Positions 436-23,717 of a stretch of DNA of 64,000 nucleotides are shown here, one piece after another (the stretch's first letter is position 1; each line of letters begins with the position of its first letter). The notes under the pieces were generated by a model. The model had not been told where the DNA came from and ran no database searches. It saw only the letters and a program-made list of their open reading frames with translations. The stretch lies in IMG/VR virus record IMGVR_UViG_3300032242_002041, positions 164,287-228,286 of that record; one strand, 5' to 3'. Both the position numbers and the translations under genes were made by a program.

Positions 436-1185
436 TCAAGATTTTTTAAACACTGGAATAGGATTCATTTTGTGTAGACTGCGAGCACGTATCTCTTGAT
501 ATTTTTGTAGGCGTTCAAGTTCCAAGCTATTTTTTACTAAAATAGTGCCTTCGTCTTGTTGCATGGCAAGTTCCAAATCAACATAAGTCATTCCGCCTAG
601 TTGATCTTCGTCTGTACGTCCATCATCCCATAAACCGTCTGTAGGAGGAGCATCAATGATGTCTTTGAGTACACCTAGTTCACGACCCATTTGCCATACT
701 TCTGTTTTGTAGCAATCAGCAATAGGACTGATATCCACACCGCCATCACCGTATTTGGTATAAAAACCTACACCAAAGTCTTCTACTTTGTTACCTGTAC
801 CTACCACAATACCCGAAACACTTTGAGCAATTTGATAAAGTGTAACCATACGCAAGCGACTGCGACTGTTGGCAAATCCTAACAAGTTGTTGTAGGTGGC
901 CAAGCGGCCTTCAAACTCATCAAAGACAGTGGTTAAGTCAATGATCTCGTGACGCACATTGTCAAAGCGTTCAGCAAGCCAGGCACCTTGGCGCATACTA
1001 AGATCGTGTAGTTCTGGACGCTGACGAATAGGCATGGTTACTGCCACAGTATTCAACCCAGTGCGAGCGCAGAGTGCGCTGACTACAGCACTGTCAATGC
1101 CGCCACTAATGCCAACTACCAATGATTTTATATTGGCTTGTTGAGCATAGTTCTTAATCCAGGCTGTAATTTGATCTTGTAACAT
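436..1185 (-). CDS. nadE: NH3-dependent NAD+ synthetase
   Basis: SGGIDS PP-loop, RLRM..LY, GTGNKVE, GFYTKYGDG, PTDGLW, DEDQLG, HKM motifs. Confidence 0.93.
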   Translation of the reverse strand: MLQDQITAWIKNYAQQANIKSLVVGISGGIDSAVVSALCARTGLNTVAVTMPIRQRPELHDLSMRQGAWLAERFDNVRHEIIDLTTVFDEFEGRLATYNNLLGFANSRSRLRMVTLYQIAQSVSGIVVGTGNKVEDFGVGFYTKYGDGGVDISPIADCYKTEVWQMGRELGVLKDIIDAPPTDGLWDDGRTDEDQLGGMTYVDLELAMQQDEGTILVKNSLELERLQKYQEIRARSLHKMNPIPVFKKS

Positions 1186-1189
1186 TATT

Positions 1190-1453
1190 TTAATATCCTT
1201 TTAATTTTAATACCAACATTTCTTTTGTACTGTACCAACGAGTCCATATCGCACGATCACCAGGACCAGAAATAATATACTGAGCACGATAGGCTAGAGT
1301 AAGCCATAACCACCGACCACTGGCATGGCAACGTCTTGGCCATAGCGACCATTTTAAATCAGTACAGGCCCGTTTTAAAAATCGTTCTTCGCTATAATGA
1401 TCTGGCATACTGAGATCCGGAATTGGCATACTATAACTAAATCCTGGCCACAT
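1190..1453 (-). CDS. hypothetical protein
   Basis: ORF packed between neighbours in the operon. Confidence 0.55.
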   Translation of the reverse strand: MWPGFSYSMPIPDLSMPDHYSEERFLKRACTDLKWSLWPRRCHASGRWLWLTLAYRAQYIISGPGDRAIWTRWYSTKEMLVLKLKGY

Positions 1454-1767
1454 TATGTAATATTATGTTCCCAAAATTGAACCTTCAACCGAGTTTCAGG
1501 ATCAAGTGTTGCCGGATCCTTTGCTTGCATTAATTCAACCCATTTCATGTAAGCCTTCCTGCCATCGCCTTGTGCTTTGGCACGCCGCCCACATTCTTCA
1601 CACACGTGAAATGCCTGAACTAAAATTTTTCCATCTTTTTTAGGATAGACTTCAAAATCTTCTTTAGTAAATTTATCCACACACCCATTAAATGTGCAAA
1701 CCACTTCCATGGTCACTGGGTCTAAAAAAGCTACATCAACTTTCTTTTTTGACATTTTTTTAATCAT
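1453..1767 (-). CDS. hypothetical protein with Cys motifs (CxxxC, CxxC), possible Zn ribbon
   Basis: ORF track 1453..1791; ATG at 1767 abuts the queE stop. Confidence 0.6.
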   Translation of the reverse strand: MIKKMSKKKVDVAFLDPVTMEVVCTFNGCVDKFTKEDFEVYPKKDGKILVQAFHVCEECGRRAKAQGDGRKAYMKWVELMQAKDPATLDPETRLKVQFWEHNIT

Positions 1768-2633
1768 TACTTGCCCCAACCATTGCCCCACAAGTCTACA
1801 TGTAAACGTGGACTATAATTAAATCCACGTTCACAGCAAATATTGGCAATGTTTAGTTTATTTGATTCATACGGATCTACAACACCGCCTTGTGGCATTA
1901 GATAGACAACACCTGTAAATCCACCTGCACGAAAAGCATCAACGGCCCGAACAGCTTCATTGACATGATCTTCAGTTTCAACAACAAACTTAAGATATAC
2001 GTGTCCGTATGTTTGATATTCGGCAACAATATCAGGACAAATGGCATCTTCCCAACGTTCGCCACTGGCACTTAGTTTAGCACTGACACTAAAGGTAACT
2101 TCTTTGTCTTCACAACCATAGGTCCAAAAATTGTCAACCAAAAACTTTTTAAAATCTTCAGATAATGCTTGGGTGCCATTGGTTTCAAATGTAAGATTTT
2201 TTAAATCTGCCATACGAGGATGACTCAACAATTCACCATAAGCACGTTGCCAACCTAGCAACGGCTCTCCACCTGTAATAACCAAGTGTACATCATTGCC
2301 GTTGTTCTGTGCCCACTGACGATTGGGAGTTAGATCTGTCATATGTGTTACAAGTTCTTCTGTAGTGTAACTAGGCGATAAATGCTTAAATGCAGGATGC
2401 CACGACGCATAGCTGTCACATCCTGTTTCTACCAAGGGCAAGTCCAAAAAGTTATTGTACATATGGACAACTTCGGCTACATCGTCGGCACCTGTGCTCT
2501 TCTCACCTGGCTTACAACCAAACCCACTACAGGTAAAGTTACAGCCATAAGTGCGTAAGAACACACTAGGCACACCAACAAAGCGTCCTTCGCCTTGTAA
2601 ACTATAAAATATTTCGCTTACTTTTATTTTCAT
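1767..2633 (-). CDS. queE: 7-carboxy-7-deazaguanine synthase (radical SAM)
   Basis: EIFYSLQGEG, VFLRTYGCNFTC, ITGGEP, ETNGT, SPRLH..LWG; start 2633 overlaps the upstream stop (ATGA). Confidence 0.92.
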   Translation of the reverse strand: MKIKVSEIFYSLQGEGRFVGVPSVFLRTYGCNFTCSGFGCKPGEKSTGADDVAEVVHMYNNFLDLPLVETGCDSYASWHPAFKHLSPSYTTEELVTHMTDLTPNRQWAQNNGNDVHLVITGGEPLLGWQRAYGELLSHPRMADLKNLTFETNGTQALSEDFKKFLVDNFWTYGCEDKEVTFSVSAKLSASGERWEDAICPDIVAEYQTYGHVYLKFVVETEDHVNEAVRAVDAFRAGGFTGVVYLMPQGGVVDPYESNKLNIANICCERGFNYSPRLHVDLWGNGWGK

Positions 2634-3127
2634 TTCCACCAATCTTCCCAAGGAAAAACAATCCACACGTCTTCTTCAGCCTTATTTAGGTCAACGGCTG
2701 AGTAGCTAACATTTAATTCACTAGTACTCGCTTCATTATCTACTAACACAGCAACACGAACAGTATCGCCCCAGATCTCTTGCCACTTTGGATTGTCCGG
2801 TAAACTACTACTCATCCAATCTTCTCGGATCCAATTTAGTGTAGCACCCGAGTCGTTAATATCGTCCACAATAAGAATACGCCGTTGTTCAAAGGCATCT
2901 TCACTCATCCATAGGTTCGATTCGGGTTGGCTAGTATCATCACGCAAACTAACCTTAAGACATTCCATTGGACATTCTAAGTACTGACTAATTAGATTAG
3001 CTGGCACTAGTCCGCCACGAGTAAGTCCAACTACATAATCAGGCCGCCATGGATCCAGTGCCATTTGACGTAGGATTTCTTGTGTTTGTGCTTCGACATC
3101 TTGCCAGGTATAATATACTTTTTTCAT
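2630..3127 (-). CDS. type I purine phosphoribosyltransferase (Gpt-like)
   Basis: GLTRGGLVPA, ILIVDDINDSGATL PRPP loop, WIVFPWE terminus. Confidence 0.88.
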   Translation of the reverse strand: MKKVYYTWQDVEAQTQEILRQMALDPWRPDYVVGLTRGGLVPANLISQYLECPMECLKVSLRDDTSQPESNLWMSEDAFEQRRILIVDDINDSGATLNWIREDWMSSSLPDNPKWQEIWGDTVRVAVLVDNEASTSELNVSYSAVDLNKAEEDVWIVFPWEDWWK

Positions 3128-3133
3128 GTTACA

Positions 3134-3162
3134 ATTATACAATACTTGCCAACACTTGTCAA
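3134..3162 (-). promoter_or_regulatory. consensus sigma70 promoter
   Basis: TTGACA-17 nt-TATAAT on the minus strand immediately upstream of the PRT gene. Confidence 0.85.
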
Positions 3163-7248: not shown

Positions 7249-7764
7249 TTAGTCTTCGTAAGTAGCTGAATTAGCACCATGTTCAAACACTTCTACAGAT
7301 TTAATCCTAACTGTTGGATTGATCGGATAACGCATGTCGCCACTAGCCAACAGTTCAGCCATTTTGTTATAGGCCAGTTTGGCAAACATTTCACAGCCTA
7401 CTCCGGGCACAATGCGCAGATCACACAAGGCACCGCGTTCATACGGCAACTTGCTTAGATGATTTTTGCTGTCAACATTTACAATTTCGTTCATGTGTTT
7501 GAAAAAATCTAACATTGGATCGTCTTCGGCCACGACCAAAGTATGATCAAACATATAGTCTGCCCATGCTTTGAATTCTTTCAAACCACCAAAGTCCATA
7601 CACCAGTTTTTGTCATCTAGTGTATCACATTCAAAGATTAATTTGATACCAATTGAGTATCCGTGAAGTGTTGAGCAGTGACTATGAGTCGCTCTCCACT
7701 GTCTAAAACAGCATGAAAGTCCGCGATCGTTGCCGTAAGTTTTTGTTGAATAGTACTTTGCCAT
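7249..7764 (-). CDS. queD: 6-carboxy-5,6,7,8-tetrahydropterin synthase
   Basis: CSTLHGY, MDFGGLK, FDHT, GCE, VEVFEHGAN. Confidence 0.9.
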   Translation of the reverse strand: MAKYYSTKTYGNDRGLSCCFRQWRATHSHCSTLHGYSIGIKLIFECDTLDDKNWCMDFGGLKEFKAWADYMFDHTLVVAEDDPMLDFFKHMNEIVNVDSKNHLSKLPYERGALCDLRIVPGVGCEMFAKLAYNKMAELLASGDMRYPINPTVRIKSVEVFEHGANSATYED

Positions 7765-7840: not shown

Positions 7841-8002
7841 CTATTTATTATCGCTGTTTGGTGCTTCTGGTTTTGTTGATGGCATTACCTTATCTATAGC
7901 AGGATTGATATAGGGTTCTACCACAGTTTTTTGGGCAGTGCCCCAACCAATGGCAGAGAAGAAGCCAATTACTATCCAGGTTCCAATCAATTCAATGATC
8001 AT
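7841..8002 (-). CDS. small membrane protein (53 aa, not in ORF track)
   Basis: Manual translation MIIELIGTWIVIGFFSAIGWGTAQKTVVEPYINPAIDKVMPSTKPEAPNSDNK; start overlaps the HIT stop. Confidence 0.65.
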   Translation of the reverse strand: MIIELIGTWIVIGFFSAIGWGTAQKTVVEPYINPAIDKVMPSTKPEAPNSDNK

Positions 8003-8367
8003 TTTTTATAATTACCTTTACCCGGTATTGTATTTCGTACACCGCCCACCGGATCCTCGACATCACCCGTTCTGCGTGGAATAAGATGAATATGGGGATA
8101 CATAACAGTCTGTCCAGCAGCCGTGCCACTGTTATACCCAATGTTGAAACCATCGCATTCTCCTTGTTCAACCATGTGATTACCATCGGCTAGTGCTTGT
8201 TCCATGGCCTGCACAATCCAATTTGGATTGTCATGTTTGGGAACATATAATCTATGACCCGGAGTACACGGATACCGGTCTAGGAATACTGCAACCAATG
8301 GACGTTCTTTGATCTTTTCAGTCCATGGTGCTATTCCGGCTTGTTGTGCTTCTAGTAGTGTTGTCAT
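7999..8367 (-). CDS. HIT family nucleotide hydrolase
   Basis: PCTPGH.L..PK.H, GQTVMYPHIHLIPR. Confidence 0.9.
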   Translation of the reverse strand: MTTLLEAQQAGIAPWTEKIKERPLVAVFLDRYPCTPGHRLYVPKHDNPNWIVQAMEQALADGNHMVEQGECDGFNIGYNSGTAAGQTVMYPHIHLIPRRTGDVEDPVGGVRNTIPGKGNYKK

Positions 8368-11110: not shown

Positions 11111-11917
11111 TTATCTAGGCGCAAAGTCCTGTTGTAGTTTAATATTATCCATAAATTCTTTTTTAGTTCCAGGATCTGTATTAAACGCACCTTTAAGTAC
11201 TGTAGTCTGTGTTAGACTACTGTGCGCCATAATGCCTCGGTTTTCGCAACAACCGTGTGTAGCTTGAATATAAACTCCAACATTCTCACTGTCGGTTGCC
11301 CGCATTATTTCTCTCGCGATGTCATTGCATAGCTCTTCTTGCAAAGTACCACGCCTAGCGCACCACTGAGCTATCCTAGTATATTTGCTAAGACCAATGA
11401 GTTTATTTGCGGCAATAATACCAATATAAGCAACACCACTGACAGGTTGATGGTGATGACTACACATGCTACGGAGCTCACTACGAACCACAAGCATACC
11501 TTCGTAACGATCCGCTGAGTCATTTGGAAAAGCTGTTGCATCTGGTGCTGGATCATATCGACCTCCCATAATTTCGTTATAATACATTTTAGCTAGACGT
11601 CTAGCGGTACCTTTACTGTTAGGATCATTTTCACGATCAATTAATAGTGTGTCCAGTACCTGTTCAAATGCCACCGTGGCTTCATTGATTAGTTGTTCTT
11701 TATCACCTTCATGTAAATAATCACTGATATTATCGCCTGCCCAGAAACGCTTCTTATCACGTTTCATCTTAAAGCGGATAGCATCGGCTAAATTTGCTTC
11801 TTTATAGCCCTTATCGTCCATGCCAACATCTTCATAGCCTGGGTGATACGGTGCTTCTTCTACTAATTTAGAATTAGCCAATGCGTTTTTTAAGTCTTCT
11901 GATGTAAATGTTGTCAA
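11111..11917 (-). CDS. folE: GTP cyclohydrolase I
   Basis: SMCSHHHQP, IGLSKYTRI, LQEEL, HGCCENRG; TTG start. Confidence 0.95.
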   Translation of the reverse strand: MTTFTSEDLKNALANSKLVEEAPYHPGYEDVGMDDKGYKEANLADAIRFKMKRDKKRFWAGDNISDYLHEGDKEQLINEATVAFEQVLDTLLIDRENDPNSKGTARRLAKMYYNEIMGGRYDPAPDATAFPNDSADRYEGMLVVRSELRSMCSHHHQPVSGVAYIGIIAANKLIGLSKYTRIAQWCARRGTLQEELCNDIAREIMRATDSENVGVYIQATHGCCENRGIMAHSSLTQTTVLKGAFNTDPGTKKEFMDNIKLQQDFAPR

Positions 11918-12591: not shown

Positions 12592-13538
12592 TGATTATAC
12601 CACTTCCATACATGGTTAATTATATCTGTCATAACAAATTTTGGTTGCCAGCCACTGACCTTTGTAAACTTGCCAGCATCAGCTGTTAGAATAGCTGGGT
12701 CACCTTCGCGCTTTGGTCCATGTAACATGGGAATATTAACGCCGGTAATCTGTGCAGACGCACGAACAATTTCAAGATTACTATATCCAGTGTTAGTACC
12801 GAGATTATAGATGTCGCTAGGAATAGTTCGATCCATTGCCAAGATATGTGCCTCGGCCAAGTCTTCCACGTGAATATAATCACGAATACAAGTGCCATCT
12901 GGTGTAGGATAATTAGTTCCATACAAAGTAAAATCTTGTTTGTTTTTAACTGATTCTAATACTCGAGCAATAATATGTGTTGCACCTGCGGCTTGTCCAT
13001 GCCGGGCTAGGCTATCTGCACCACACGCATTAAAATAACGAAAACTCACATAGTCTAAACCATAAGCACGATGATAACTGGCCAACATCCAATCAATCAT
13101 CAACTTGCTTTCGCCATACGGGCTGATCGGTTCTTTGGGATCAATTTCCTGCACAGGAGTTATGACGGGATTGCCGTAGGTTGCAGCACTGCTACTAAAA
13201 ATAAATCTAACTTGTTTATCGTGATTCCTAATCAAATAGTCTAGTAGGATTTTAGTTTTGATAAAATTGTTGTTGTAGTACTCTTGAGGATCTTGCATAC
13301 TAGGACCAACTAAGCTGGTACCAGCACAATGAATAACAGCGTCTGGACAAAATCGCTTGATAGCATCCAGCCCTAGCTCAGCTGCAAAGTCTCCAGTATG
13401 CCACTGGCACGGAACAGGAATCAAGTTACCAGGAGGCATTACCCGATCAATCGCTAATACATCGTGCCCGTCATCCACTAATTTTAATAATGTTTCCCCG
13501 CCAATGAATCCAGCAGCACCAGTGACTACTACTTTCAT
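12588..13538 (-). CDS. galE: UDP-glucose 4-epimerase
   Basis: GAAGFIG, FSSSAATYG, YGESK, RYFNACGA, DGTCIRDYIHV. Confidence 0.9.
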   Translation of the reverse strand: MKVVVTGAAGFIGGETLLKLVDDGHDVLAIDRVMPPGNLIPVPCQWHTGDFAAELGLDAIKRFCPDAVIHCAGTSLVGPSMQDPQEYYNNNFIKTKILLDYLIRNHDKQVRFIFSSSAATYGNPVITPVQEIDPKEPISPYGESKLMIDWMLASYHRAYGLDYVSFRYFNACGADSLARHGQAAGATHIIARVLESVKNKQDFTLYGTNYPTPDGTCIRDYIHVEDLAEAHILAMDRTIPSDIYNLGTNTGYSNLEIVRASAQITGVNIPMLHGPKREGDPAILTADAGKFTKVSGWQPKFVMTDIINHVWKWYNQ

Positions 13539-14740
13539 CCTTCAATTTTCCTTACGTGATACTTGGCTTGGCTTACATGATCGCGATAACGATTGCCTGC
13601 ACGATTCCACTGTTCACCGTTACCTTCTAAGATGTCCACAATACGATCCACAGTGCCATCAGTCCAGTCACTGATCAGGCCTGTATTGTGATGTAATTCA
13701 CCTAACAAGTTTTCTAACTTGTGATAAGCGTCATCAATGCTCCAAGGAACATATAACCTGTTAGGATCGTCAGCAAAAGTTTCAGGGAAACTGCGATAAG
13801 CAGGATAAAGCACATTAGAGCCAAGTGTGTCTGCTTCCGAGACGGTGTTGCTGACCCAGTCTTGTAAAGCACAATTAAACAATACCCGAGTATCATTGAG
13901 CAAATTATAGTAATCATTTTTCTTTAAGTTTTCATAGATTGTAAGTTTACCTTCGCTTTGCAAAACTCTTGCTCTAGTTACATATTCTGAATTATTACTA
14001 CGCAATGGACCACCTTGGAATATGGCAAATTCAATATCTTTATGACGACCTTGGCTATAGTACATGTCAATCAAATCCATAAAGAAACCTGGTTGTTTCT
14101 CTTGGTCAAATCTAGCTGCAAACCCCACTCGGATCTTACGTTCATTAAATGGTTTAATATTTTGAGCGCCACCAATGCGTTCTAGCACCTCTTCTTTGCC
14201 AAAAGCAAGTCCAGAGATATTGTAGATTGGAGCCGACCAACCTGCAATACGCATATGAGCCACCATCTCTTCGTTAGTGGCCAACACACCTGTTACGAAC
14301 TCATTGACCATCTTCTCATATAAGTCCATCCACTTGGCCATACCCCAGACATGAACAAAGTCGTCTGGATCAATTGCTTGTGCCAGACAACGCACAAAGA
14401 CCTTAGGACGTTGCTCCGCTGGAATTTGATCCATAATGTATGGCAACGATTCGATGCCTGGCTGGAACATGTCTTCAAAGTAGATAACGTCTTCACTAGT
14501 TACATCACCGTTACGCATCATTTGAACCAAGTTCATCATTTGACTCATGCCAAAGTAACTGCGACCGTGTGCGTCTAGCACCTGTCCAACACTAATACTT
14601 TGCGTGTTGTCAATAGTATTGCCAGGAACATAGACTACATCTAGTCCACGACGATCAAATACACGCCGATTCCATTCTGTAAGTTGTAGAGTGTAGCGAG
14701 CCTCATATGACTCCAAGCCCATATAGAATAATTTACGCAC
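13535..14740 (-). CDS. GT-B fold glycosyltransferase-like protein
   Basis: FAARFDQEKQP and LYPAYRSFPE resemble the GT-B C-terminal donor-binding region; likely GTG start 14740 (track start 14881 overlaps the upstream gene). Confidence 0.65.
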   Translation of the reverse strand: MRKLFYMGLESYEARYTLQLTEWNRRVFDRRGLDVVYVPGNTIDNTQSISVGQVLDAHGRSYFGMSQMMNLVQMMRNGDVTSEDVIYFEDMFQPGIESLPYIMDQIPAEQRPKVFVRCLAQAIDPDDFVHVWGMAKWMDLYEKMVNEFVTGVLATNEEMVAHMRIAGWSAPIYNISGLAFGKEEVLERIGGAQNIKPFNERKIRVGFAARFDQEKQPGFFMDLIDMYYSQGRHKDIEFAIFQGGPLRSNNSEYVTRARVLQSEGKLTIYENLKKNDYYNLLNDTRVLFNCALQDWVSNTVSEADTLGSNVLYPAYRSFPETFADDPNRLYVPWSIDDAYHKLENLLGELHHNTGLISDWTDGTVDRIVDILEGNGEQWNRAGNRYRDHVSQAKYHVRKIEG

Positions 14741-14960
14741 GGCGATATCCTGAGAATCTACGAGTATCTTCTTCCCACATGTTTTTGGCATTCTTGCCTT
14801 GAGTAAATTTGTTATACTGTTGCCAGGCATAAGAACGGAAGTTGTAGAGATCTTCTTCTCTATAACGGTATCCGTAGTCACGACAGAATTCCAAGTAGTT
14901 TGACAAATCTTCTAATGCTTGAAGAGCTCTTGGGTTTACACGATGTTGGGGTTTGCCCAT
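14733..14960 (-). CDS. hypothetical protein
   Basis: ORF with SD (AGGAAC) between dpdL and the GT gene. Confidence 0.65.
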   Translation of the reverse strand: MGKPQHRVNPRALQALEDLSNYLEFCRDYGYRYREEDLYNFRSYAWQQYNKFTQGKNAKNMWEEDTRRFSGYRRA

Positions 14961-14970
14961 GATAGTTCCT

Positions 14971-15432
14971 TTAAATTACAGTTGATTGTGTTGGACGAGT
15001 AAGATTATAACTAATGGAGCATCCGTTCTCGCCGTCTTCGGATACTTCAATTACTACAGCACGACCGGGATAGCGTTCGGCTATCTTTAAATATAAATCA
15101 TCGGCAATCATTTCACATGATTTCCAGTCTAGTTCTAAAACGGGATTCGAAACAATTCCGTTATTGGAATAGAGATTTTCAAGCCACCGTTTGAATTGGA
15201 TGAATTCGATATCTCTGTCGTTATGGAAGACATCGATTGACACCCGGAAATGAAAGATATGGCGATGAGGACTGGCCAAAAACGATACATCATATTCTCC
15301 TGCTGTGCATAATGCTGGGTCTGTTGCAGCCGCTGGATAGCGATGAATGCCTTCCTTACGGAATGTAACCCAAATTTGTCTCTGGGCTGCCGCTTTAATG
15401 CGTTCAATAGTTTCGCGTTCTTGTTGTATCAT
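14971..15432 (-). CDS. dpdL: QueD-like T-fold protein, probable CDG decarboxylase DpdL
   Basis: LASPHRHIF matches LxxxHRHxF; DRDIEFI, SCEMIA, VSEDGENG; second QueD paralogue in the cluster. Confidence 0.75.
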   Translation of the reverse strand: MIQQERETIERIKAAAQRQIWVTFRKEGIHRYPAAATDPALCTAGEYDVSFLASPHRHIFHFRVSIDVFHNDRDIEFIQFKRWLENLYSNNGIVSNPVLELDWKSCEMIADDLYLKIAERYPGRAVVIEVSEDGENGCSISYNLTRPTQSTVI

Positions 15433-16604
15433 TTCTGGTGGCTTTCTATATTAGTATTATTAAACGAGTCAATGGCATCATACATATCTGGAAAAATTGC
15501 ACGACTATTTAATTTTCTATCTTGGTCTAATTTGTTAAATTCTTCTACTGTATATTCAAGTCCGTCCCAATTGGATTTATAGGGAGTTCGATCGTCGTTT
15601 AACGAGGCAATTACGTTGTCAATGCCAAGAATATTTGAATAATCATTTTTAGAAATTCGCTGTCTAACCAACTCTCTCTGGTGATCAGTTAGTCGTTGAA
15701 TTGCCCACGGACCACCATTATCTCTCAGATTGTAGATATTAATAGTTATTGCTCGATGAGATATATTCAAAGTTTGATGCACCAAATCAATAAAATCCCA
15801 AATTGACAACGAGTTAATATTCATAAACACCATGTTAAAACTAAGGTGATGCTTTGCAATCAAGTTAATTGTGTGTAAATTTTCTAAGAAAACATTCCAT
15901 TTTCCGGGCCAACGAATATATTCATATTGTTCTGCAATTGATTCTCCGCTAACTAACCATTGTACATTACTAAACTGTTTCAACAATTCAAAAATTTTAT
16001 TTTCGTGTATTAGGCTAAGATTAGTATTAACACAAATACGACAAGATTTATTAACTTCTAATAATTTTCTTAAGACTATTTCGTTTTCTTTTATCATCAA
16101 CGGCTCGCCACCAGCAAGATATATTTCTTTAAGGTCGGCAGCAGATTCTAAAACATAATCTAACAAATCTCCTTTGGCTTCTTTCATCTTAACTACTTGA
16201 TATTTCTGTTCGGCCCATAGTGAGCTGAGCTCAGGGTCACAATATATGCAGGCAAAATTGCAGGTATTGTTCCAACGCAAATCAAGATATTTTAAATTAA
16301 AGTTATCAATATTGTTGTAAAACTCATCACCAAGATGGTTATATTTCTTTTTAAAATGATGTTGTAAAGTATGAGTACCAATCTGAGAGTGGCAATTTTT
16401 ACACCCTTCAACCGGAATATCATTTAACATCATTGTTTTGATATCGAGATTATTAGAGCCGCTTATTGTGTCTTTGATTGCAGGAGTTTTATTAATATTA
16501 CCTAATTTATTTTTACTCACACAACAATTTTCTATATTGCCTTGGGGGTCAATATACAGTGAAACCCACGGCGCTGGACAGAAATGTTTATTATCTATGG
16601 TCAT
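15429..16604 (-). CDS. radical SAM protein with N-terminal SPASM/twitch-like Cys domain
   Basis: FCPAPW..CC..GCKNC, then CNFACIYC, AGGEP. Confidence 0.85.
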   Translation of the reverse strand: MTIDNKHFCPAPWVSLYIDPQGNIENCCVSKNKLGNINKTPAIKDTISGSNNLDIKTMMLNDIPVEGCKNCHSQIGTHTLQHHFKKKYNHLGDEFYNNIDNFNLKYLDLRWNNTCNFACIYCDPELSSLWAEQKYQVVKMKEAKGDLLDYVLESAADLKEIYLAGGEPLMIKENEIVLRKLLEVNKSCRICVNTNLSLIHENKIFELLKQFSNVQWLVSGESIAEQYEYIRWPGKWNVFLENLHTINLIAKHHLSFNMVFMNINSLSIWDFIDLVHQTLNISHRAITINIYNLRDNGGPWAIQRLTDHQRELVRQRISKNDYSNILGIDNVIASLNDDRTPYKSNWDGLEYTVEEFNKLDQDRKLNSRAIFPDMYDAIDSFNNTNIESHQK

Positions 16605-16930
16605 TTTTGTAGCAATTCCATAGTTACAATTTTACCAATTGATTCAGATAAGTTTTCATCAGGGGTAACAATGTGTAGTTTAATCCGTTCTTCGTCTTTT
16701 TTGTGGTCATAATATTTGGTTTCAATTACTGTACCACCCGATACCTGTTGTACACGGAAGCGTATTGGATCCGGAAGTTCGAGACAATCTTTCGTCTCAA
16801 CGTCACAGTCATCAAAACTGACGCTAATACTTCCACGTCCAATCCTAGCAGGTTTACTTTTTTCTTCACTTAATTCGTAACTAAAATCCCAACCCCATGC
16901 AACTATCTTTGCCCATAACCATCTAATCAT
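16601..16930 (-). CDS. hypothetical protein
   Basis: Overlapping operon ORF. Confidence 0.65.
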   Translation of the reverse strand: MIRWLWAKIVAWGWDFSYELSEEKSKPARIGRGSISVSFDDCDVETKDCLELPDPIRFRVQQVSGGTVIETKYYDHKKDEERIKLHIVTPDENLSESIGKIVTMELLQK

Positions 16931-17442
16931 TTGATAACCTCGTCCTTTGTGTATTTAGACCAGTCAGTAAACACCTCACGTTTTTGTAAATCGTGTAACG
17001 AGTGGCACCAGACGCCTGGGTTTGTTGCTGCAAAATCTCGGTCATCAATTTTAAGAGTAGCATTGTATCCAAACTGTTTAATATAAGGAAGTTTAACGCT
17101 AATCATTGGAATGAAGTTATGGAATTCTACCAGTGCGGATTCAAGTAATCCTTCTGCCTGTTGAATATCTAAATCCAAAGTACATAACCAGCCAGCTTCC
17201 AAGCAGTCTTGTACCATGACTTCCCAATCACGCCATGCATCACCGTCATTTTTATCCAATGCTGGAAAACTCTGATTGGCACCAAAGTAGATATGTTCAA
17301 TGTTGTTATTCTTTGCTTCCTGTTGGACGATTTGTGAATCCTGTACACCTACTACAAATAGTGTACGGCGTCCAAACGCAGGGGTATGTTCTACTTCGGT
17401 TCCTGTAAAGAAACTTACTTCTTCGTGTCCTGCTCTAATCAT
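16927..17442 (-). CDS. conserved hypothetical protein of the deazaguanine cluster (paralogue within 26930..27655)
   Basis: GTEVEHTPAFGRRTLFV..HIYF..GVW..FTDWSKYTKD; likely start 17442. Confidence 0.7.
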   Translation of the reverse strand: MIRAGHEEVSFFTGTEVEHTPAFGRRTLFVVGVQDSQIVQQEAKNNNIEHIYFGANQSFPALDKNDGDAWRDWEVMVQDCLEAGWLCTLDLDIQQAEGLLESALVEFHNFIPMISVKLPYIKQFGYNATLKIDDRDFAATNPGVWCHSLHDLQKREVFTDWSKYTKDEVIK

Positions 17443-17641
17443 TTTGTTCTGTATTATAATGGGTGGATGGATTATTTTCTTGTTTAAGTATAACAATTTG
17501 TTTTTTTAATTGCAACCTTTGTTTCTTCAAATCAGTTAGTTCAACATCATCAAACACACCGGTGCTTTCCAAACCGTCAATTCTTTTGTTGAGTGCGTGG
17601 TGTGCTTCTTCTAAATGTTTAATTCTTCTTTCCCAAGACAT
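17435..17641 (-). CDS. small coiled-coil protein (YdcH/DUF465-like)
   Basis: HHALNKRI...LKKQRLQLKKQI pattern. Confidence 0.6.
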   Translation of the reverse strand: MSWERRIKHLEEAHHALNKRIDGLESTGVFDDVELTDLKKQRLQLKKQIVILKQENNPSTHYNTEQND

Positions 17642-19341
17642 TAGGCCTCCAGATTATCTAGTTTTGATTCATCTAAATCGGCATCATCTCCATCAATGCC
17701 ATCGTTTGATTCCTCTACTTCAAATAATGCATTAAATTGACTGTGTGCGTTTTTGGCTTTTTTACCTTTGAATCCGCGTGTGCCTACAATGTCCATCCAG
17801 TAACGATCATAAGACTCAATAATGGCTTCGGCTTCGGCACGATCAGGCGTAGCAAAGATGGCTTCTACAATGTCTTTAAATCGTGTATGATCTCCGTTTT
17901 GATCCCACATCATGGCGGGCCAAGATCCGTTGTCATATTCACGATTAGCTCTTTGTACAGCTTCTAGGTGCATCCAAACATTATGGCCCATTAGTAATGC
18001 ATAACTAAAACTATCCCACGATGTCTTGCCTTCTTTGCCAATCTTGTTCAACATACCAGGTTGATAGTAACAAACATCCTTCATTTGTAACTGTAGACTG
18101 ATTGGACTCTCGTCAAAGTGATCAACAAGACCATCGGCTACTACCGCTTGTCCATACGGACGAGTATCTGTTGAATACTTTTTATCGTCCGCAATTGGAC
18201 TCATTCGATAGCACCACTTTTCGTTGTGTGGAAGGTCGATGTGGTGGTAGACTTGCCCATTTGCTGTAGCCAAAAACGGCGAAGCACAATCAAAACTAAT
18301 AGTAAAAGAAGGATTAACATACTTACGAACTGCACGTTGAATGTCTGTAAGTAATACTGCCCACTCTAATTTACTTGTGCCCAAGAAGTGCATCCAATCA
18401 TGCACACCTTCTTTTAACAAGCCATCGTGGCGTAATGCTACAAGTCTACGCAGGACCAAATGCACATCGCACATGTTCTGACCACCCATTGACCAACCAT
18501 CAAAGTGTGTGTCTGGGTATATGGCAGGGTCACAATAGTGTTTCATTGTTTCATACCAACGATCTGCGTCAGCGTGATTGGCACCTTGTAAAACATTAAG
18601 AACTTTCATGCCACCATTCTTGGCGCCCTTGCGGTGCTTCATGTAATAGTCATTATTATATTTGGTAGCAGCCACAGCTTCTTCTAGTGTAGTAATGCCA
18701 CACTTGGCGCTGGCGTGTTTGTCATGTATGACCCAGGTTGGTATATCAAGTGTCATACCATAGTCGGCAACACCATCTAACCATTTGAGTACAGCTTCAC
18801 GTTTCTTCTGTGCAGCATCTAATAGATTTTGATAATTTTTAACATGATCAATCTTAATGTATTTGGTATTACCATTCTTATCGTGCTTGGGGGTACCATC
18901 GGGTTTAAGATCCGGCACATGCTCAACACCCTTGGCCCGGAGCTCGGCCATCTTGGCCAACACCACTGGACTTGTTGGGTCGCGCCACTCACCTTCCCAT
19001 AGACCTTTGGCAATTTGGAATCCACCTGAGTCGCCTAGCATTACAGTGCCAGGTTCACGATTACGAACCATATCCTCTGACCAGTCTTGTTTGGTTAGAT
19101 CCAAGTTGGCATGTCCACCCGAATACAAAGACCACTTATATGGAAATAAGCTCTTGGCGCTGTTAAGCCAGTTCATCATTTCCATATCTTTCATGCCAGC
19201 TGGCATACGAGTTTTTGGGTCTACATACGGTCCGTTTACTGGATCTCGTTGTTTACCTATGTAAGTGGCATAGAAACCACTAATAGCTGGCAAGAACACA
19301 GCATAATCGTTTTGTTTGGCTGTAAGATTATCTTGAGTCAT
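17641..19341 (-). CDS. dpdA: divergent tRNA-guanine transglycosylase-like protein (DpdA family, probably DpdA3-type)
   Basis: DSGGFQ, MTLDIP, VLQG, HFLGTS, SFDCASP TGT core motifs; in folE/queD/queE cluster. Confidence 0.8.
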   Translation of the reverse strand: MTQDNLTAKQNDYAVFLPAISGFYATYIGKQRDPVNGPYVDPKTRMPAGMKDMEMMNWLNSAKSLFPYKWSLYSGGHANLDLTKQDWSEDMVRNREPGTVMLGDSGGFQIAKGLWEGEWRDPTSPVVLAKMAELRAKGVEHVPDLKPDGTPKHDKNGNTKYIKIDHVKNYQNLLDAAQKKREAVLKWLDGVADYGMTLDIPTWVIHDKHASAKCGITTLEEAVAATKYNNDYYMKHRKGAKNGGMKVLNVLQGANHADADRWYETMKHYCDPAIYPDTHFDGWSMGGQNMCDVHLVLRRLVALRHDGLLKEGVHDWMHFLGTSKLEWAVLLTDIQRAVRKYVNPSFTISFDCASPFLATANGQVYHHIDLPHNEKWCYRMSPIADDKKYSTDTRPYGQAVVADGLVDHFDESPISLQLQMKDVCYYQPGMLNKIGKEGKTSWDSFSYALLMGHNVWMHLEAVQRANREYDNGSWPAMMWDQNGDHTRFKDIVEAIFATPDRAEAEAIIESYDRYWMDIVGTRGFKGKKAKNAHSQFNALFEVEESNDGIDGDDADLDESKLDNLEA

Positions 19342-21059: not shown

Positions 21060-23717
21060 TTACCACTCAAATAAAGTTTGGAAGGTATTTTCGGTGTTAG
21101 TAGCTGCCGCTAGATCCCATTCCAACACACCTAACAAATTGTCTAATTTTTGATCTACCACTGTGGCTTCCATTTCGCTGTCATCAAATGGTAGTTCTTT
21201 AAACCACGTAGGAAGATGTGTTTCATCAGTAGGATAACCTATTGACGTCCAGCCCAGTGGGTTTGCTTTAAGTTTGCAAACAATAGTTTTCATGCCATCT
21301 ACAATTTGCATACTATACTTGTCACTGTTCATACGACGCAAATTGTTCCAGTTAAGTGCGGCACGGACATGTCCTGGCATGTTGGCTTTGCCTAGGCGTT
21401 CTTCTTCCTTGCCATATTTGGTCAAGTTGTTTACACGCTTAGGACTACCCTTTTCCCAACCTGGACGTTCTTTGAACTTGTACTTGAACTCGCGAATCTT
21501 TTCAATGATTTCTTCACGACTTGTGCCAATTAGTACCTCATCAAGAATTTGACTTAGGAATTCTTGAATAACCTTAGGAGTATCACTACGCTTGAGATCT
21601 AATCCCATGGCTTTTACTTTACCCGGTGATCCGTGTGTGTCTACACGCTTGTTTTCTTTGTCGTAGTACATGACAGCATACCGCTTTTTAGTAATAAACA
21701 AGCCTTTACTGGCAACAATCTCACGTCCACCTTTAATAACATCGCCCATCTCCCTAGGCACGTGAAATGCTTGTTCCATAAAACCTGGAAAGCTATCGTT
21801 AACTTGATCAGCAATACTGTTATACAGTCGAACGGCAATTTCACGACTCCAGGTCATGTTGCCTGCTTCTATTTCTTTTTGTAGTACAGGATACGCTGTA
21901 AAATAACACGAGTCTGTATCACCATATATAATTGCCTCGCCTACGTGATCATACACACCTGTGATACATTCGTTCACATACGCATCCATATGCCGGGCAA
22001 TTGCACGACCAGTAAGAGTTGTGGATTGACCAATACGCTTATCAAAGAAACGGCAACCAGGATTAAGAATAGCACCATAGAGACTGTTGAGGTTAATCTT
22101 TTTAACAAGTTGACGCTTGTCCCAGTATTCTTCATCTTCTGCATTTTTACACTCCTTTAATCGGGCCTGCATCTCTTTACGTTCAGCATACCAACGTTTT
22201 AACAATCCTGGAATAACAGCTTCCTTCTCATAGGTAAAGATAGTACCGTTAGCGGTAATCATCCAAGGATGATTGCTATCAAAAATTATCTTCCATATGT
22301 CAGCGGCACTGTGTACACTCTCCTCACCGTCTTTCCAGTCAATGGTAATTTCTGTACCTACTTCGGTATTCATGACTGCTTCGTATTCTAAACTTCCAAA
22401 CAGGCCTTCCCATGCCCCGGCAAATGAGCTACCTGCTCGCATCTTATCACCAATATAGCGTTCAGTCATTATAGGTCGGAGTTGTCCTACAATAGTTTCA
22501 GGTCCCATATTAAGTGCTCTAATAGCACTTGGATACAGTGAGTTAATATCTATACTACCTACATACTCGTGTATGCCTTTTTTTGGAAACGCAACATAGG
22601 CACCTGCGGCTTGTGTGTCTTCATCCGAATAGCGTTCCTTGCGATTAGGCACAACCATACCACGCTCGTGTGCTTCGTTAATAATTGCTTGTTCTGTTAC
22701 AGCTACAGCACCCATTGTAGTTTGTAGTAACACTGTGTTTTCGTGTGCTAGGGTATTGGCCAAATCCAAGAACTTTAATTTCTTATCCAGCTTGGCAAGA
22801 ATCATTGTGTCCTGACGGTTATATTCGATAAACTTTTTAAAGTTTTGATTGTACAATTGATCAAGTGTGCCTTCAAACACCGTCTTGGTTTCTTGTAACT
22901 CATATTCAGCAATAGCATCCAAACTATAACTATGGCGTTCTTCGTATGTGTACTTGCGATACAGTTGCATATAGTCCATATGCACACGACCAATTAAATC
23001 GTAGGTTTCGTTTTCTGCACCAAAGCGTTCGAACATACGTTTCTTAGGGTACTGGTTCCACAGGCAAAATCTGCGTGTATCATCCTTGCTGAGAATACGT
23101 GTAACACGATTTACTGTGTAGGGTATATCATAACCCTCTGAGTTCCAACCGGATAGTGCATCGGCGTCTTCGATAAGGTCCAAGAATGTTTTTAACATTT
23201 CATCTTCACGCTCAAAGACGACGCAGTTTTCAAACTCCTTGGCAATTTCGTTCGCAGTTGCACGACTCATATGCTTGGGCGGAACAACTAGCGTGACCAT
23301 TTGATCGAGCCATTGCAAGTAGACCGAGATTGCAGTGATAGCATTAAATGGATCTGTTGTTGGTGAGAAACCACGTTCGGGATCAAAGTCTACTTCAATG
23401 TCAAAGAATGCTACGTTTAACTTGGGACCATCTTGCCCTTTGTAGTTTTCTTCTAAGCACCGAAAGATTGGATTGATATCACTCTCATACAGTTGCTTGC
23501 CTGACTGTATGCGAATTTCTTTACGAAACTCTTTGTTGTTGCGTGTGCTGAATCTACTGACAGGTGTGCCGAATAGGCTTAGGAATTTACCACGAGGATC
23601 CTCGTAATAAAATACATAGTTGGCCGGATATTCTTGATAGGTTCTACGTCCATCCTTCCGTTCAACTACATGAATACGATCGTGTTCACGATCAAATAGT
23701 GCATCTACATAACTCAA
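21060..23717 (-). CDS. polB: family B DNA polymerase
   Basis: FFDIEV ExoI, WNSEGYD, DINSLYPS, KINLNSLYG, YGDTDS, KKRY; TTG start. Confidence 0.97.
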   Translation of the reverse strand: MSYVDALFDREHDRIHVVERKDGRRTYQEYPANYVFYYEDPRGKFLSLFGTPVSRFSTRNNKEFRKEIRIQSGKQLYESDINPIFRCLEENYKGQDGPKLNVAFFDIEVDFDPERGFSPTTDPFNAITAISVYLQWLDQMVTLVVPPKHMSRATANEIAKEFENCVVFEREDEMLKTFLDLIEDADALSGWNSEGYDIPYTVNRVTRILSKDDTRRFCLWNQYPKKRMFERFGAENETYDLIGRVHMDYMQLYRKYTYEERHSYSLDAIAEYELQETKTVFEGTLDQLYNQNFKKFIEYNRQDTMILAKLDKKLKFLDLANTLAHENTVLLQTTMGAVAVTEQAIINEAHERGMVVPNRKERYSDEDTQAAGAYVAFPKKGIHEYVGSIDINSLYPSAIRALNMGPETIVGQLRPIMTERYIGDKMRAGSSFAGAWEGLFGSLEYEAVMNTEVGTEITIDWKDGEESVHSAADIWKIIFDSNHPWMITANGTIFTYEKEAVIPGLLKRWYAERKEMQARLKECKNAEDEEYWDKRQLVKKINLNSLYGAILNPGCRFFDKRIGQSTTLTGRAIARHMDAYVNECITGVYDHVGEAIIYGDTDSCYFTAYPVLQKEIEAGNMTWSREIAVRLYNSIADQVNDSFPGFMEQAFHVPREMGDVIKGGREIVASKGLFITKKRYAVMYYDKENKRVDTHGSPGKVKAMGLDLKRSDTPKVIQEFLSQILDEVLIGTSREEIIEKIREFKYKFKERPGWEKGSPKRVNNLTKYGKEEERLGKANMPGHVRAALNWNNLRRMNSDKYSMQIVDGMKTIVCKLKANPLGWTSIGYPTDETHLPTWFKELPFDDSEMEATVVDQKLDNLLGVLEWDLAAATNTENTFQTLFEW

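What the first reader, a model, noticed from the sequence alone, without database searches (positions are those of the whole stretch)
2630..3162. Purine PRT co-transcribed with queE from a perfect sigma70 promoter
Seen: a Gpt-like PRT translationally coupled to queE behind TTGACA-17-TATAAT. Inference: it could phosphoribosylate a deazaguanine base (CDG/DG), giving a pre-replicative nucleotide route for incorporation by PolB instead of base exchange on DNA.
Basis: inference. Interest (0 to 1): 0.6.

Follow-up and report, generated by a model that had tools for sequence, protein, structure and literature searches.

The report
Phage purine PRT inside deazaguanine DNA-modification cluster
A jumbo phage expresses a guanine-type phosphoribosyltransferase together with the enzymes that make 7-deazaguanine for its DNA; this gene turns out to be a widespread but apparently undescribed part of such clusters, and it always sits beside, not instead of, a DNA base-exchange enzyme.

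Summary
On the minus strand a 165-aa type I PRT (3127..2630) overlaps queE by ATGA. It is preceded by a perfect TTGACA-17-TATAAT whose -10 ends 6 nt before the ATG, so the mRNA is probably leaderless. The promoter is kept in 47 of 76 related contigs, and PRT-then-QueE order in 78 of 78.

The link to deazaguanine is real and general. Of 105 diverse viral PRT loci, 76 carry FolE/QueD/QueE/DpdL within 10 kb. Isolates with the PRT include phiST (dDG replaces all G), Flavobacterium phage immuto_2-6A (fdPreQ1 replaces all G), PA5oct-like phages, BUCT-ZZ01 and Brevundimonas phages. The papers I could search never mention this PRT.

The idea that it works "instead of base exchange" fails. The same gene array holds a DpdL (15432..14971) and a divergent 566-aa TGT-fold transglycosylase (19341..17641) that standard profiles miss. 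68 of the 105 loci carry a TGT-like gene.

My best reading (about 0.45) is that the PRT recycles the guanine expelled from DNA into GMP and then GTP, the pathway's precursor. The main rival (about 0.3) is a TubE-like PRT acting on CDG or 7-deazaguanine. An enzyme assay would decide between them.

The parts
3157..3162 (-). -35 hexamer TTGACA of the PRT-queE promoter
   Evidence: Conserved in 47 of 76 related loci.
3134..3139 (-). -10 hexamer TATAAT, 17 nt after the -35 and 6 nt before the ATG (leaderless-type arrangement)
   Evidence: The same geometry occurs at 6 other genes of the genome.
2630..3127 (-). Type I purine phosphoribosyltransferase, Gpt/XGPRT-like, 165 aa
   Evidence: PF00156 at 4.5e-17. 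Best NCBIfam hit is xanthine PRT PRK09177 at 51.6 bits, below the 138 cutoff. PDB hits are 1vdm, 4z1o and E. coli XGPRT. Motifs RGG, VDDINDSGAT and WIVFPWE.
1767..2633 (-). QueE-like radical-SAM CDG synthase; its ATG overlaps the PRT stop (ATGA)
   Evidence: phrog_2076 at 5e-52; QueE NCBIfam N-terminal matches; sequence.
1190..1453 (-). orf87, a conserved small ORF downstream of QueE, function unknown
   Evidence: Present in 50 related loci. No family hit.
436..1185 (-). NadE-type NH3-dependent NAD synthetase, same operon direction; a neighbour specific to this lineage
   Evidence: PF02540 at 2.8e-48; TIGR00552 at 168 bits, above its cutoff. Absent from other PRT loci.
7249..7764 (-). QueD (CPH4 synthase), with its own 11/12 promoter at 7811-7783
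   Evidence: PF01242 at 7e-15; promoter.
7999..8367 (-). HIT-family nucleotide hydrolase/transferase, conserved between FolE and QueD in this lineage
   Evidence: PF01230 at 1.2e-9; synteny.
11111..11917 (-). FolE (GTP cyclohydrolase I)
   Evidence: PF01227 at 8e-39.
14971..15432 (-). DpdL (QueD paralogue, proposed CDG decarboxylase), motif L-x3-HRH-x-F
   Evidence: HMM E 6e-63; alignment with phiST DpdL; 28 phage isolates carry homologues.
13535..14881 (-). GT-B (GT1/GT4-like) glycosyltransferase that follows DpdL; also beside DpdL in PA5oct and BUCT-ZZ01
   Evidence: Atlas feature search; synteny.
16927..17496 (-). orf189, unknown, conserved between the TGT-like gene and DpdL
17641..19341 (-). 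Divergent TGT-fold (DpdA-like) transglycosylase, 566 aa, with invariant DSGGFQ (D104) and FDC (D351) motifs
   Evidence: hhalign against a DpdA3 profile: E 1.4e-4. Alignment A5. AF2 model with pLDDT 84.6. Top 50 Foldseek PDB hits are all TGT, E 3e-8. Homologue in PA5oct gp168.
21060..23717 (-). T4 gp43-like family B DNA polymerase (context only)
   Evidence: phrog_262 at 2e-195.

Best explanation
The PRT is a fixed, co-inherited component of a phage 7-deazaguanine DNA-modification module of the QueC-less DpdL type. The module comprises FolE, QueD, QueE, DpdL, a TGT-fold DNA transglycosylase and the PRT. In this ~345-kb freshwater jumbo phage the PRT heads an operon (PRT-QueE-orf87-NadE). A consensus host sigma70 promoter drives the operon, and its -10 lies 6 nt before the AUG, which should give a leaderless mRNA. 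Most likely mechanism (inferred): the enzyme keeps its ancestral chemistry, guanine + PRPP -> GMP. Each base exchange by the transglycosylase expels one free guanine from phage DNA, and each new deazaguanine base costs one GTP at FolE. The PRT, helped by an NMP kinase, closes this loop: DNA-G -> guanine -> GMP -> GTP -> CDG -> 7-deazaguanine -> DNA. It also removes the guanine that would otherwise compete for re-insertion, which would allow near-complete replacement of G. Shown here: the gene, the overlap with queE, the promoter and its conservation, the module composition, the TGT fold of orf566 and the co-occurrence statistics. Inferred: the substrate, the direction of flux, and that this phage's DNA is modified.
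For: Gene, overlap and promoter.
Module membership:
- 76 of 105 diverse viral PRT loci carry que genes within 10 kb, and 68 of 105 carry a TGT-like gene.
- The PRT phylogeny groups by the type of TGT-like partner.
- The closest cellular PRTs (30-39% identity) are not next to que genes.
- The family is rare among isolates. Of 27 of 50,697 phage records found, 23 are deazaguanine phages.
TGT-like enzyme in the same array.
For guanine as substrate:
- All 6-oxopurine PRT signatures are invariant: the RGG loop, D88-D89, the N7-contacting Asp92, and W155 with the FPW motif. These hold in both que-linked and cellular homologues.
- The PRT accompanies pathways with different end bases: DG in phiST, preQ0-type in StAshley, fdPreQ1 in immuto_2-6A. 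What these share is GTP consumption and guanine release.
- Both phages with measured total G replacement (phiST and immuto_2-6A, Table 1 of PMC10516641) carry it.
- The PRT is very often directly beside FolE and beside NMP/dNMP kinases.
Against: - No assay exists, and sequence cannot fix the base specificity.
- TubE, a Gpt-like PRT whose authors align it with the same PDB entry (4Z1O) that ranks second for this protein, is specific for CDG.
- The PRT is most often adjacent or translationally coupled to QueE, the enzyme that makes CDG.
- phiST's cluster also holds a MazG-like pyrophosphatase and a P-loop kinase. These are typical of pre-replicative nucleotide pathways.
- Cui et al. could not obtain dDG from DpdL plus DpdA alone.
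- Que-linked PRTs share an R62-D63 pair in the flexible loop that cellular homologues lack. This could reflect a changed substrate.
- Many DpdL phages (ACP17, Xanthomonas, Vibrio and others) showed no PRT with my two queries, so the PRT is not obligatory.
Confidence: 0.45

Rival explanations
1. TubE/ToyH-like deazapurine PRT. The enzyme condenses PRPP with CDG (the QueE product) or with 7-deazaguanine to give a 7-deazaguanosine 5'-monophosphate. DpdL may then decarboxylate at the nucleotide level. Kinases, RNR and NDK turn this into 7-deaza-dGTP, which PolB incorporates during replication. The TGT-like enzyme would then only top up or proofread residual G.
For: - Precedent: TubE is a CDG-specific, Gpt-like PRT in a FolE/QueD/QueE cluster without QueC.
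- PRT and QueE are adjacent or translationally coupled across several phage lineages.
- phiST has PRT-dNMP kinase-x-RNR, and MazG plus an AAA_18 kinase inside the dDG cluster.
- Total replacement of G in phiST and immuto_2-6A is easier to reach pre-replicatively.
- The dDG pathway was not reconstituted with DpdL+DpdA alone.
- An R62-D63 pair is specific to que-linked PRTs.
Against: - A TGT-like transglycosylase is present in nearly all of these modules.
- Asp92, which pairs with purine N7, is invariant. It would face C7-H or a 7-carboxylate in a deaza substrate.
- The PRT also occurs in preQ0 and fdPreQ1 pathways, where a CDG-nucleotide branch would bypass QueC and QueF.
- A ribonucleotide product would also enter RNA.
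- No dGTP-removing enzyme was found in the jumbo phage: the phiST MazG profile gave no hit.
Confidence: 0.3
2. Ordinary purine-salvage auxiliary gene. The PRT simply boosts GMP/XMP/IMP supply for a large genome, and its position beside que genes reflects shared early expression or a nucleotide-metabolism neighbourhood rather than a mechanistic tie.
For: - 29 of 105 viral PRT loci show no que gene within 10 kb, and a faecal phage has the PRT alone.
- The sequence is a typical XGPRT-like enzyme.
- Neighbours in this window include many unrelated metabolic genes: Rml genes, UDP-glucose dehydrogenase, NadE.
Against: - Linkage recurs in at least five unrelated phage groups, with different gene orders.
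- 23 of 27 isolate records with this PRT are deazaguanine phages.
- The PRT tree tracks the TGT-type partner.
- Cellular homologues lack the linkage.
Confidence: 0.12
3. The PRT starts a small-molecule branch. A deazapurine ribonucleotide is further tailored (GT-B glycosyltransferase, HIT protein, NadE-type amidation, sugar-nucleotide genes) into a nucleoside or dinucleotide analogue that is used against the host or rival phages, not placed in DNA.
For: - FolE/QueD/QueE plus a PRT is the signature of toyocamycin- and tubercidin-type clusters.
- A GT-B gene sits beside DpdL in the jumbo lineage, PA5oct and BUCT-ZZ01.
- NadE and HIT are conserved in the array.
Against: - A TGT-fold enzyme and DpdL point to DNA.
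- Relatives with the same core genes have chemically proven DNA modification.
- NadE and HIT are absent from other PRT modules.
- NadE passes the curated nadE cutoff, so it is probably a true NAD synthetase.
Confidence: 0.08

Closest known systems
Phage 7-deazaguanine DNA-modification clusters of the dDG type (Cellulophaga phage phiST: FolE, QueD, QueE, DpdL, DpdA3; Cui et al., NAR 2023, PMC10516641)
   Same: FolE, QueD and QueE are present and QueC is absent. DpdL carries the published LxxxHRHxF motif. A TGT-superfamily transglycosylase is present. phiST itself carries a homologous PRT (33% identity).
   Different: The published scheme has no PRT or kinase step; the words 'phosphoribosyl' and 'kinase' occur 0 times in that paper. 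It concludes that all such modifications are post-replicative. The transglycosylase here is a 566-aa protein that the DpdA1-like and DpdA3 profiles and Pfam TGT all miss. The cluster is spread over ~19 kb and interleaved with sugar-nucleotide and glycosyltransferase genes.
TubE (tubercidin) and ToyH (toyocamycin) phosphoribosyltransferases of Streptomyces
   Same: A small Gpt-like type I PRT encoded with GTP cyclohydrolase I, CPH4 synthase and CDG synthase. TubE's cluster, like this one, lacks QueC and has a decarboxylation step. The TubE paper aligns it with S. solfataricus GpT-2 (4Z1O), the second-best PDB match of this protein.
   Different: Those clusters lack any TGT or DpdA and make free nucleoside antibiotics. 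Their decarboxylase is UbiD-type, not a T-fold DpdL. I could not obtain the TubE or ToyH sequences, so direct similarity and active-site residues were not compared.
Xanthine-guanine PRT (Gpt, E. coli) and archaeal purine PRTs (P. horikoshii 1VDM, S. solfataricus GpT-1/2)
   Same: PRPP motif with the two Asp plus the third Asp, the RGG loop and the C-terminal W-x-x-FPW purine-stacking motif. Best family and PDB hits.
   Different: Only 24-33% identity. The score is far below the equivalog cutoff (51.6 against 138 bits). There is a 25-residue insertion after the PRPP motif in the jumbo lineage. An R-D pair in the flexible loop is specific to que-linked phage enzymes.
Pre-replicative base-replacement systems of phages (T4 hmC; S-2L/PhiVC8 2-aminoadenine with PurZ, MazZ, DatZ)
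   Same: A phage-encoded nucleotide-metabolism enzyme placed beside the polymerase and replication genes, in phages that replace a base completely (from my own knowledge of these systems).
   Different: No enzyme that removes the canonical dGTP was found in the jumbo phage. A post-replicative exchange enzyme is present.

Membership tests
Type I phosphoribosyltransferase (PF00156) | PRPP-binding motif (hydrophobic run, two acidic residues, then xxxTGxT) and a score above the Pfam gathering threshold | tested here: met
   62.2 bits against a 26.3 cutoff. Motif LIVDDINDSGAT at residues 84-96.
6-oxopurine PRT, XGPRT/Gpt subfamily | NCBIfam equivalog score for xanthine PRT (NF006613) | tested here: not met
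   51.6 bits against a 138 cutoff. The match covers only residues 2-103.
6-oxopurine PRT, XGPRT/Gpt subfamily | Third Asp of the PRPP motif (the N7-contacting Asp; that role is from my memory of HGPRT/XGPRT structures) and the C-terminal aromatic W-x-x-FPW purine platform | tested here: met
   D92, W155, P159 and W160 are conserved in 92-100% of 61 que-linked and of 23 cellular homologues.
6-oxopurine PRT, XGPRT/Gpt subfamily | Catalysis of guanine/xanthine + PRPP -> GMP/XMP | not testable with these tools
   Needs an enzyme assay.
TubE/ToyH deazapurine PRT | Encoded with FolE, QueD and QueE homologues | tested here: met
TubE/ToyH deazapurine PRT | Cluster and genome lack nucleic-acid insertion enzymes (TGT/DpdA), the rule used in 10.64898/2026.04.15.718813 | tested here: not met
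   A TGT-fold orf566 lies 14.5 kb upstream in the same array. 68 of 105 PRT loci have a TGT-like gene.
TubE/ToyH deazapurine PRT | Activity on CDG or preQ0; direct sequence kinship to TubE/ToyH | not testable with these tools
The only link is indirect, through the shared PDB relative 4Z1O.
Phage dDG-type deazaguanine DNA-modification module | FolE + QueD + QueE present, QueC absent | tested here: met
   The only QueC-profile hit is the NadE PP-loop region.
Phage dDG-type deazaguanine DNA-modification module | DpdL with LxxxHRHxF in place of the QueD CxxxHGH motif | tested here: met
   The sequence FLASPHRHIFHF is present. HMM E 6e-63.
Phage dDG-type deazaguanine DNA-modification module | DpdA-family DNA transglycosylase | tested here: met
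   Fold and both catalytic-Asp motifs are present. The subfamily is unassigned: hhalign to DpdA3 gives only 53% probability, and there are no hits to phrog_887, phrog_7068 or phrog_20335. Activity on DNA is inferred.
Phage dDG-type deazaguanine DNA-modification module | dDG actually present in virion DNA | not testable with these tools
   Only assembled contigs of DNA runs hold this sequence.
Sigma70-type promoter giving a leaderless mRNA | Consensus -35/-10 with a 17-nt spacer, more than chance, conserved among relatives | tested here: met
Sigma70-type promoter giving a leaderless mRNA | Mapped 5' end at the AUG | not testable with these tools
   No RNA run holds the sequence.

The most novel reading that the evidence does not exclude
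The phage PRT has been retuned, like TubE, to phosphoribosylate CDG or 7-deazaguanine. Phages that replace all G (phiST-type, immuto-type, PA5oct-type and this jumbo lineage) would then build a 7-deaza-(d)GTP pool and write the base during replication, with the TGT-like enzyme as a secondary, polishing route. This would overturn the current view that all phage 7-deazaguanine DNA modifications are post-replicative. It would also supply the missing factor in dDG reconstitution.
Probability: 0.28. Interest if true: 0.85.

Novelty: new variant of a known kind. Interest (0 to 1): 0.6.

Why it matters
How some phages replace every guanine with a 7-deazaguanine is unresolved. The published dDG pathway (DpdL + DpdA3) could not be reconstituted, and its authors suggested that an enzyme is missing.

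This analysis identifies a purine PRT as a recurrent, co-inherited member of exactly those modules. It is present in both phages with measured 100% replacement. It is not mentioned in the literature I could search.

Whichever role it has, guanine recycling or synthesis of a deaza-nucleotide, it is a concrete candidate for the missing factor and is cheap to test.

The work also uncovers a large (~500-570 aa) TGT-fold family that the Pfam TGT model and the three PHROG transglycosylase profiles I tried miss. This shows that "no DpdA found" calls in phage genomes are unreliable. That matters for genome-mining rules which use DpdA absence to label clusters as secondary metabolism.

Finally, the conserved consensus promoter abutting the AUG indicates systematic use of leaderless mRNAs by an abundant freshwater jumbo-phage lineage.

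Tried and rejected
- orf112/103 downstream of QueE as DpdL: no similarity.
- orf274 beside QueD as DpdA: it has LPTRGR and DxD motifs, so it is GT-A-like, and it has no PDB hit.
- Pfam TGT (PF01702) as a DpdA detector: it fails on the positive controls phage 9g and phiST, so its negatives are void.
- phrog_887 (positive control works), phrog_7068 and phrog_20335: no hit in G000, in the complete relatives G001 and G002, in BUCT-ZZ01 or in StAshley. I briefly read this as "no DpdA". That was wrong, because orf566 is TGT-fold and StAshley_00090 is DpdA3-like.
- hmmsearch of the orf566 profile against PDB sequences: nothing. Only the fold search worked.
With the phiST PRT alone it found no viral relatives.
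- The reverse test starting from DpdL was swamped by the jumbo lineage, in which the PRT lies more than 10 kb away. I used isolate genomes instead.
- A riboswitch in the ~190-nt PRT-QueE spacer of relatives: there is no Rfam hit, and the spacer is a small ORF.
- RNA evidence for the transcription start: no RNA run holds the sequence.
- The PRT tree: deep nodes are unresolved (quick search only), so I claim neither monophyly nor polyphyly of the que-linked PRTs.
- TubE and ToyH sequences could not be fetched, so I made no direct comparison.
Full report
**What is there**

The window is the last 64 kb of a 228-kb IMG/VR virus record, estimated 66% complete. Complete relatives are 337-344 kb with terminal repeats. 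Nearly all genes lie on the minus strand.

- The flagged ORF runs from ATG 3127 to TGA 2630 (165 aa) and is a type I PRT. It matches PF00156 at 4.5e-17.
- Its best family hit is xanthine PRT, at 51.6 bits against an equivalog cutoff of 138.
- Its best solved relatives are the P. horikoshii purine PRT, S. solfataricus GpT-2 and E. coli XGPRT.
- Its stop overlaps the ATG of a QueE-like radical-SAM gene as ATGA.

**The promoter**

- TTGACA (3162-3157), a 17-nt spacer and TATAAT (3139-3134) fill the 38-nt gap after the upstream gene's stop. This is the only 12/12 site in the window.
- The -10 ends 6 nt before the ATG and there is no Shine-Dalgarno, so the mRNA should be leaderless.
- In 47 of 76 related contigs the same -35/17/-10 arrangement, followed 5-6 nt later by the ATG, is kept. 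The spacer sequence and the upstream gene differ between them.
- Across the 228-kb record, strong sites of this type are nearly all on the coding strand. Seven of them sit 6-7 nt before the ATG of an ORF of at least 73 aa.
- No RNA run holds the sequence, so the 5' end is untested.

**The operon**

- PRT-then-QueE order holds in 78 of 78 informative relatives.
- The overlap is direct in 18 of them.
- In about 35, a ~64-aa ORF lies between the two genes with ATGA overlaps at both ends. The window has lost that small ORF.

**The surrounding array**

Going upstream on the coding strand from the PRT, the array holds:
- an unknown 248-aa gene;
- three Rml-type sugar genes;
- a GT-A-like gene;
- QueD, with its own 11/12 promoter;
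- a HIT protein and an FG-GAP protein;
- FolE;
- aminotransferase and epimerase genes;
- a GT-B glycosyltransferase;
- a DpdL carrying the published LxxxHRHxF motif;
- a radical-SAM/SPASM gene;
- orf109, orf189 and orf566;
- then PolB.

QueC is absent.

**Is there a DNA transglycosylase?**

Standard profiles said no. Pfam TGT, phrog_887 (whose positive control on phage 9g worked), phrog_7068 and phrog_20335 gave no hit. This was true even in two complete relatives. Pfam TGT also failed on phage 9g and on phiST, so its negatives mean nothing.

A profile-profile screen of the conserved unknown genes then flagged orf566 against a DpdA3 profile at E 1.4e-4.
- Its 16-member alignment has invariant LGDSGGFQI and FDC motifs. 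From my own knowledge these are the two catalytic-Asp signatures of TGT.
- The AlphaFold model has pLDDT 84.6.
- The model's 50 best PDB matches are all tRNA-guanine transglycosylase, at E about 3e-8.

So the phage does encode a DpdA-like enzyme, from a long and unrecognised subfamily. That subfamily is also present in PA5oct gp168, in Sinorhizobium phage Phosso and in many metagenomic contigs.

**How general is the PRT link?**

Isolates that carry a homologous PRT:
- The Cellulophaga phiST group. The gene order is PRT-dNMP kinase-x-RNR, and the dDG cluster with DpdA3, an AAA_18 kinase, DpdL and MazG lies elsewhere in the genome.
- Synechococcus phage BUCT-ZZ01, with QueE-PRT-x-QueD-FolE-GT-x-DpdL-GT.
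- Brevundimonas phages, with QueC-QueD-QueE-x-DpdA3-like ... RNR-dNMP kinase-FolE-PRT.
- Flavobacterium phage immuto_2-6A, with QueD-x-QueE-x-x-PRT-FolE ... DpdA3-type-DpdN-kinase-QueF.
- Eleven PA5oct-like jumbo phages, with TGT-like-GT-DpdL-x-x-PRT-QueE.

Among 105 diverse IMG/VR loci found with the BUCT-ZZ01 and Brevundimonas PRTs:
- 76 have que genes within 10 kb, and 58 have DpdL;
- 68 have a TGT-like gene (35 DpdA3, 26 orf566-type, 7 DpdA1-type);
- only 8 have QueC.

The closest cellular homologues come from Sphingomonadales, Ca. Actinomarina and others, at 30-39% identity. They are not beside que genes. In a quick tree the PRTs cluster by the type of TGT partner, but the deep nodes are unresolved.

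**What the literature says**

- Cui et al. 2023 found dDG replacing all G in phiST and fdPreQ1 replacing all G in immuto_2-6A. They proposed DpdL and DpdA3 and could not reconstitute dDG. They concluded that all such modifications are post-replicative.
- That paper never mentions a phosphoribosyltransferase or a kinase.
- TubE of the tubercidin pathway is a Gpt-like PRT specific for CDG + PRPP, and it rejects 7-deazaguanine. Its authors align it with PDB 4Z1O, which is also this protein's second-best PDB hit.
- A 2026 genome-mining preprint uses "PRT present, DpdA absent" to mark secondary-metabolite clusters, and it does not treat phages.
- I found no paper that connects a PRT with phage deazaguanine DNA.

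**Interpretation**

The specific proposal, a nucleotide route that replaces base exchange, is not supported, because a transglycosylase accompanies the PRT almost everywhere. Two mechanisms remain.

(A) Guanine recycling, which I favour at about 0.45.
- Every exchange releases one guanine, and every new deaza base costs one GTP.
- The PRT, with the NMP kinases often found beside it, closes that loop. It also removes a competing substrate.
- This explains three things. The enzyme keeps every 6-oxopurine signature, including the N7-contacting Asp. It occurs with pathways that end in different bases. It marks the two phages known to replace all G, and it so often abuts FolE.

(B) A TubE-like deaza-base PRT, at about 0.3.
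- This is favoured by the QueE coupling and the Streptomyces precedent.
- It is also favoured by the MazG and kinase genes in phiST, the failed reconstitution, and an R62-D63 pair specific to que-linked PRTs.

A plain salvage gene (about 0.12) and a small-molecule branch (about 0.08) are less likely.

**Novelty**

The kind of system is known. What appears to be new:
- the PRT as a conserved module member;
- the orf566-type TGT-like family together with its GT-B and orf189 companions;
- the conserved leaderless promoter.

A handful of enzyme assays and knockouts in PA5oct, phiST or immuto would settle the mechanism.

Noticed in passing
window 17641-19341 (-): 566-aa protein with a TGT fold and invariant DSGGFQ/FDC motifs. 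It is missed by Pfam TGT and by the DpdA-type PHROG profiles. It represents a ~500-570-aa DpdA-like family that is also found in PA5oct gp168, Sinorhizobium phage Phosso and 26 of 105 metagenomic PRT loci.
   Followed up: yes
window 13535-14881 (-); L376:8584-9666; L002:12909-14072: A GT-B (GT1/GT4-like) glycosyltransferase sits next to DpdL in three unrelated phages (this lineage, PA5oct and BUCT-ZZ01) and in 30 of 105 PRT loci. This hints that the final product or the DNA is further glycosylated. Unexplained.
   Followed up: partly
window 16927-17496 (-): orf189 is always wedged between the TGT-like gene and DpdL, and often overlaps DpdL. No family, atlas or profile match. It occurs in 19 of 105 diverse PRT loci.
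   Followed up: partly
G000 226550, 222677, 175366, 167448, 161705, 15386, 15102 (window 62264, 58391, 11080, 3162 for the first four): Several strong sigma70-consensus promoters end 6-7 nt before the start codon, so leaderless mRNAs seem to be a regular feature of this phage. Five perfect 12/12 promoters occur in 228 kb, all on the coding strand.
   Followed up: partly
L007:14973-15260, L009:12603-12909, L020:11322-11655: Relatives carry a betaproteobacterial-type (permuted) tmRNA and several tRNA genes a few kb downstream of the NadE/UDP-glucose dehydrogenase genes. This is a hint that the host is a freshwater betaproteobacterium. The window itself has no Rfam hit.
   Followed up: no
L007:7653-7859 and about 35 other related loci: A ~64-aa ORF lies between PRT and QueE with ATGA overlaps at both ends. 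It has been deleted in the window, which creates the direct PRT/queE overlap.
   Followed up: partly
L006:46381-46860 (phiST CGPG_00066); L379:12621-13145 (immuto gp203): P-loop nucleotide-kinase-like genes lie inside the published dDG and fdPreQ1 clusters. In phiST the gene gives an AAA_18 hit; in immuto it is annotated 'thymidylate kinase'. The phiST gene was left as unknown in Cui et al. 2023.
   Followed up: partly
L088:6975-7775 (StAshley_00090); L002:11254-12504 (BUCT-ZZ01 416-aa protein): StAshley_00090 is DpdA3-like (hhalign 96%). The BUCT-ZZ01 protein directly upstream of DpdL carries a 'DSGGLQ' motif and may be yet another hidden TGT-like enzyme. Both are annotated as hypothetical.
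   Followed up: partly
window 436-1185 (-) and 7999-8367 (-): A bona fide NadE-type NAD synthetase lies in the PRT-QueE operon, and a HIT-family protein lies between FolE and QueD. Both are conserved in this lineage only. Their relation to the pathway, if any, is unknown.
   Followed up: partly
window 15429-16604 (-) and 23802-24875 (-): Two radical-SAM/SPASM proteins. One is inserted between orf109 and DpdL in this genome but not in most relatives.
   Followed up: no
L092 (Chitinophagales MAG contig), L091, L093: 'Bacterial' MAG contigs carry DpdL, FolE, PRT, QueE and an orf566-type gene, or close PRT homologues (48-68% identity). They are probably phage contigs binned into MAGs.
   Followed up: no
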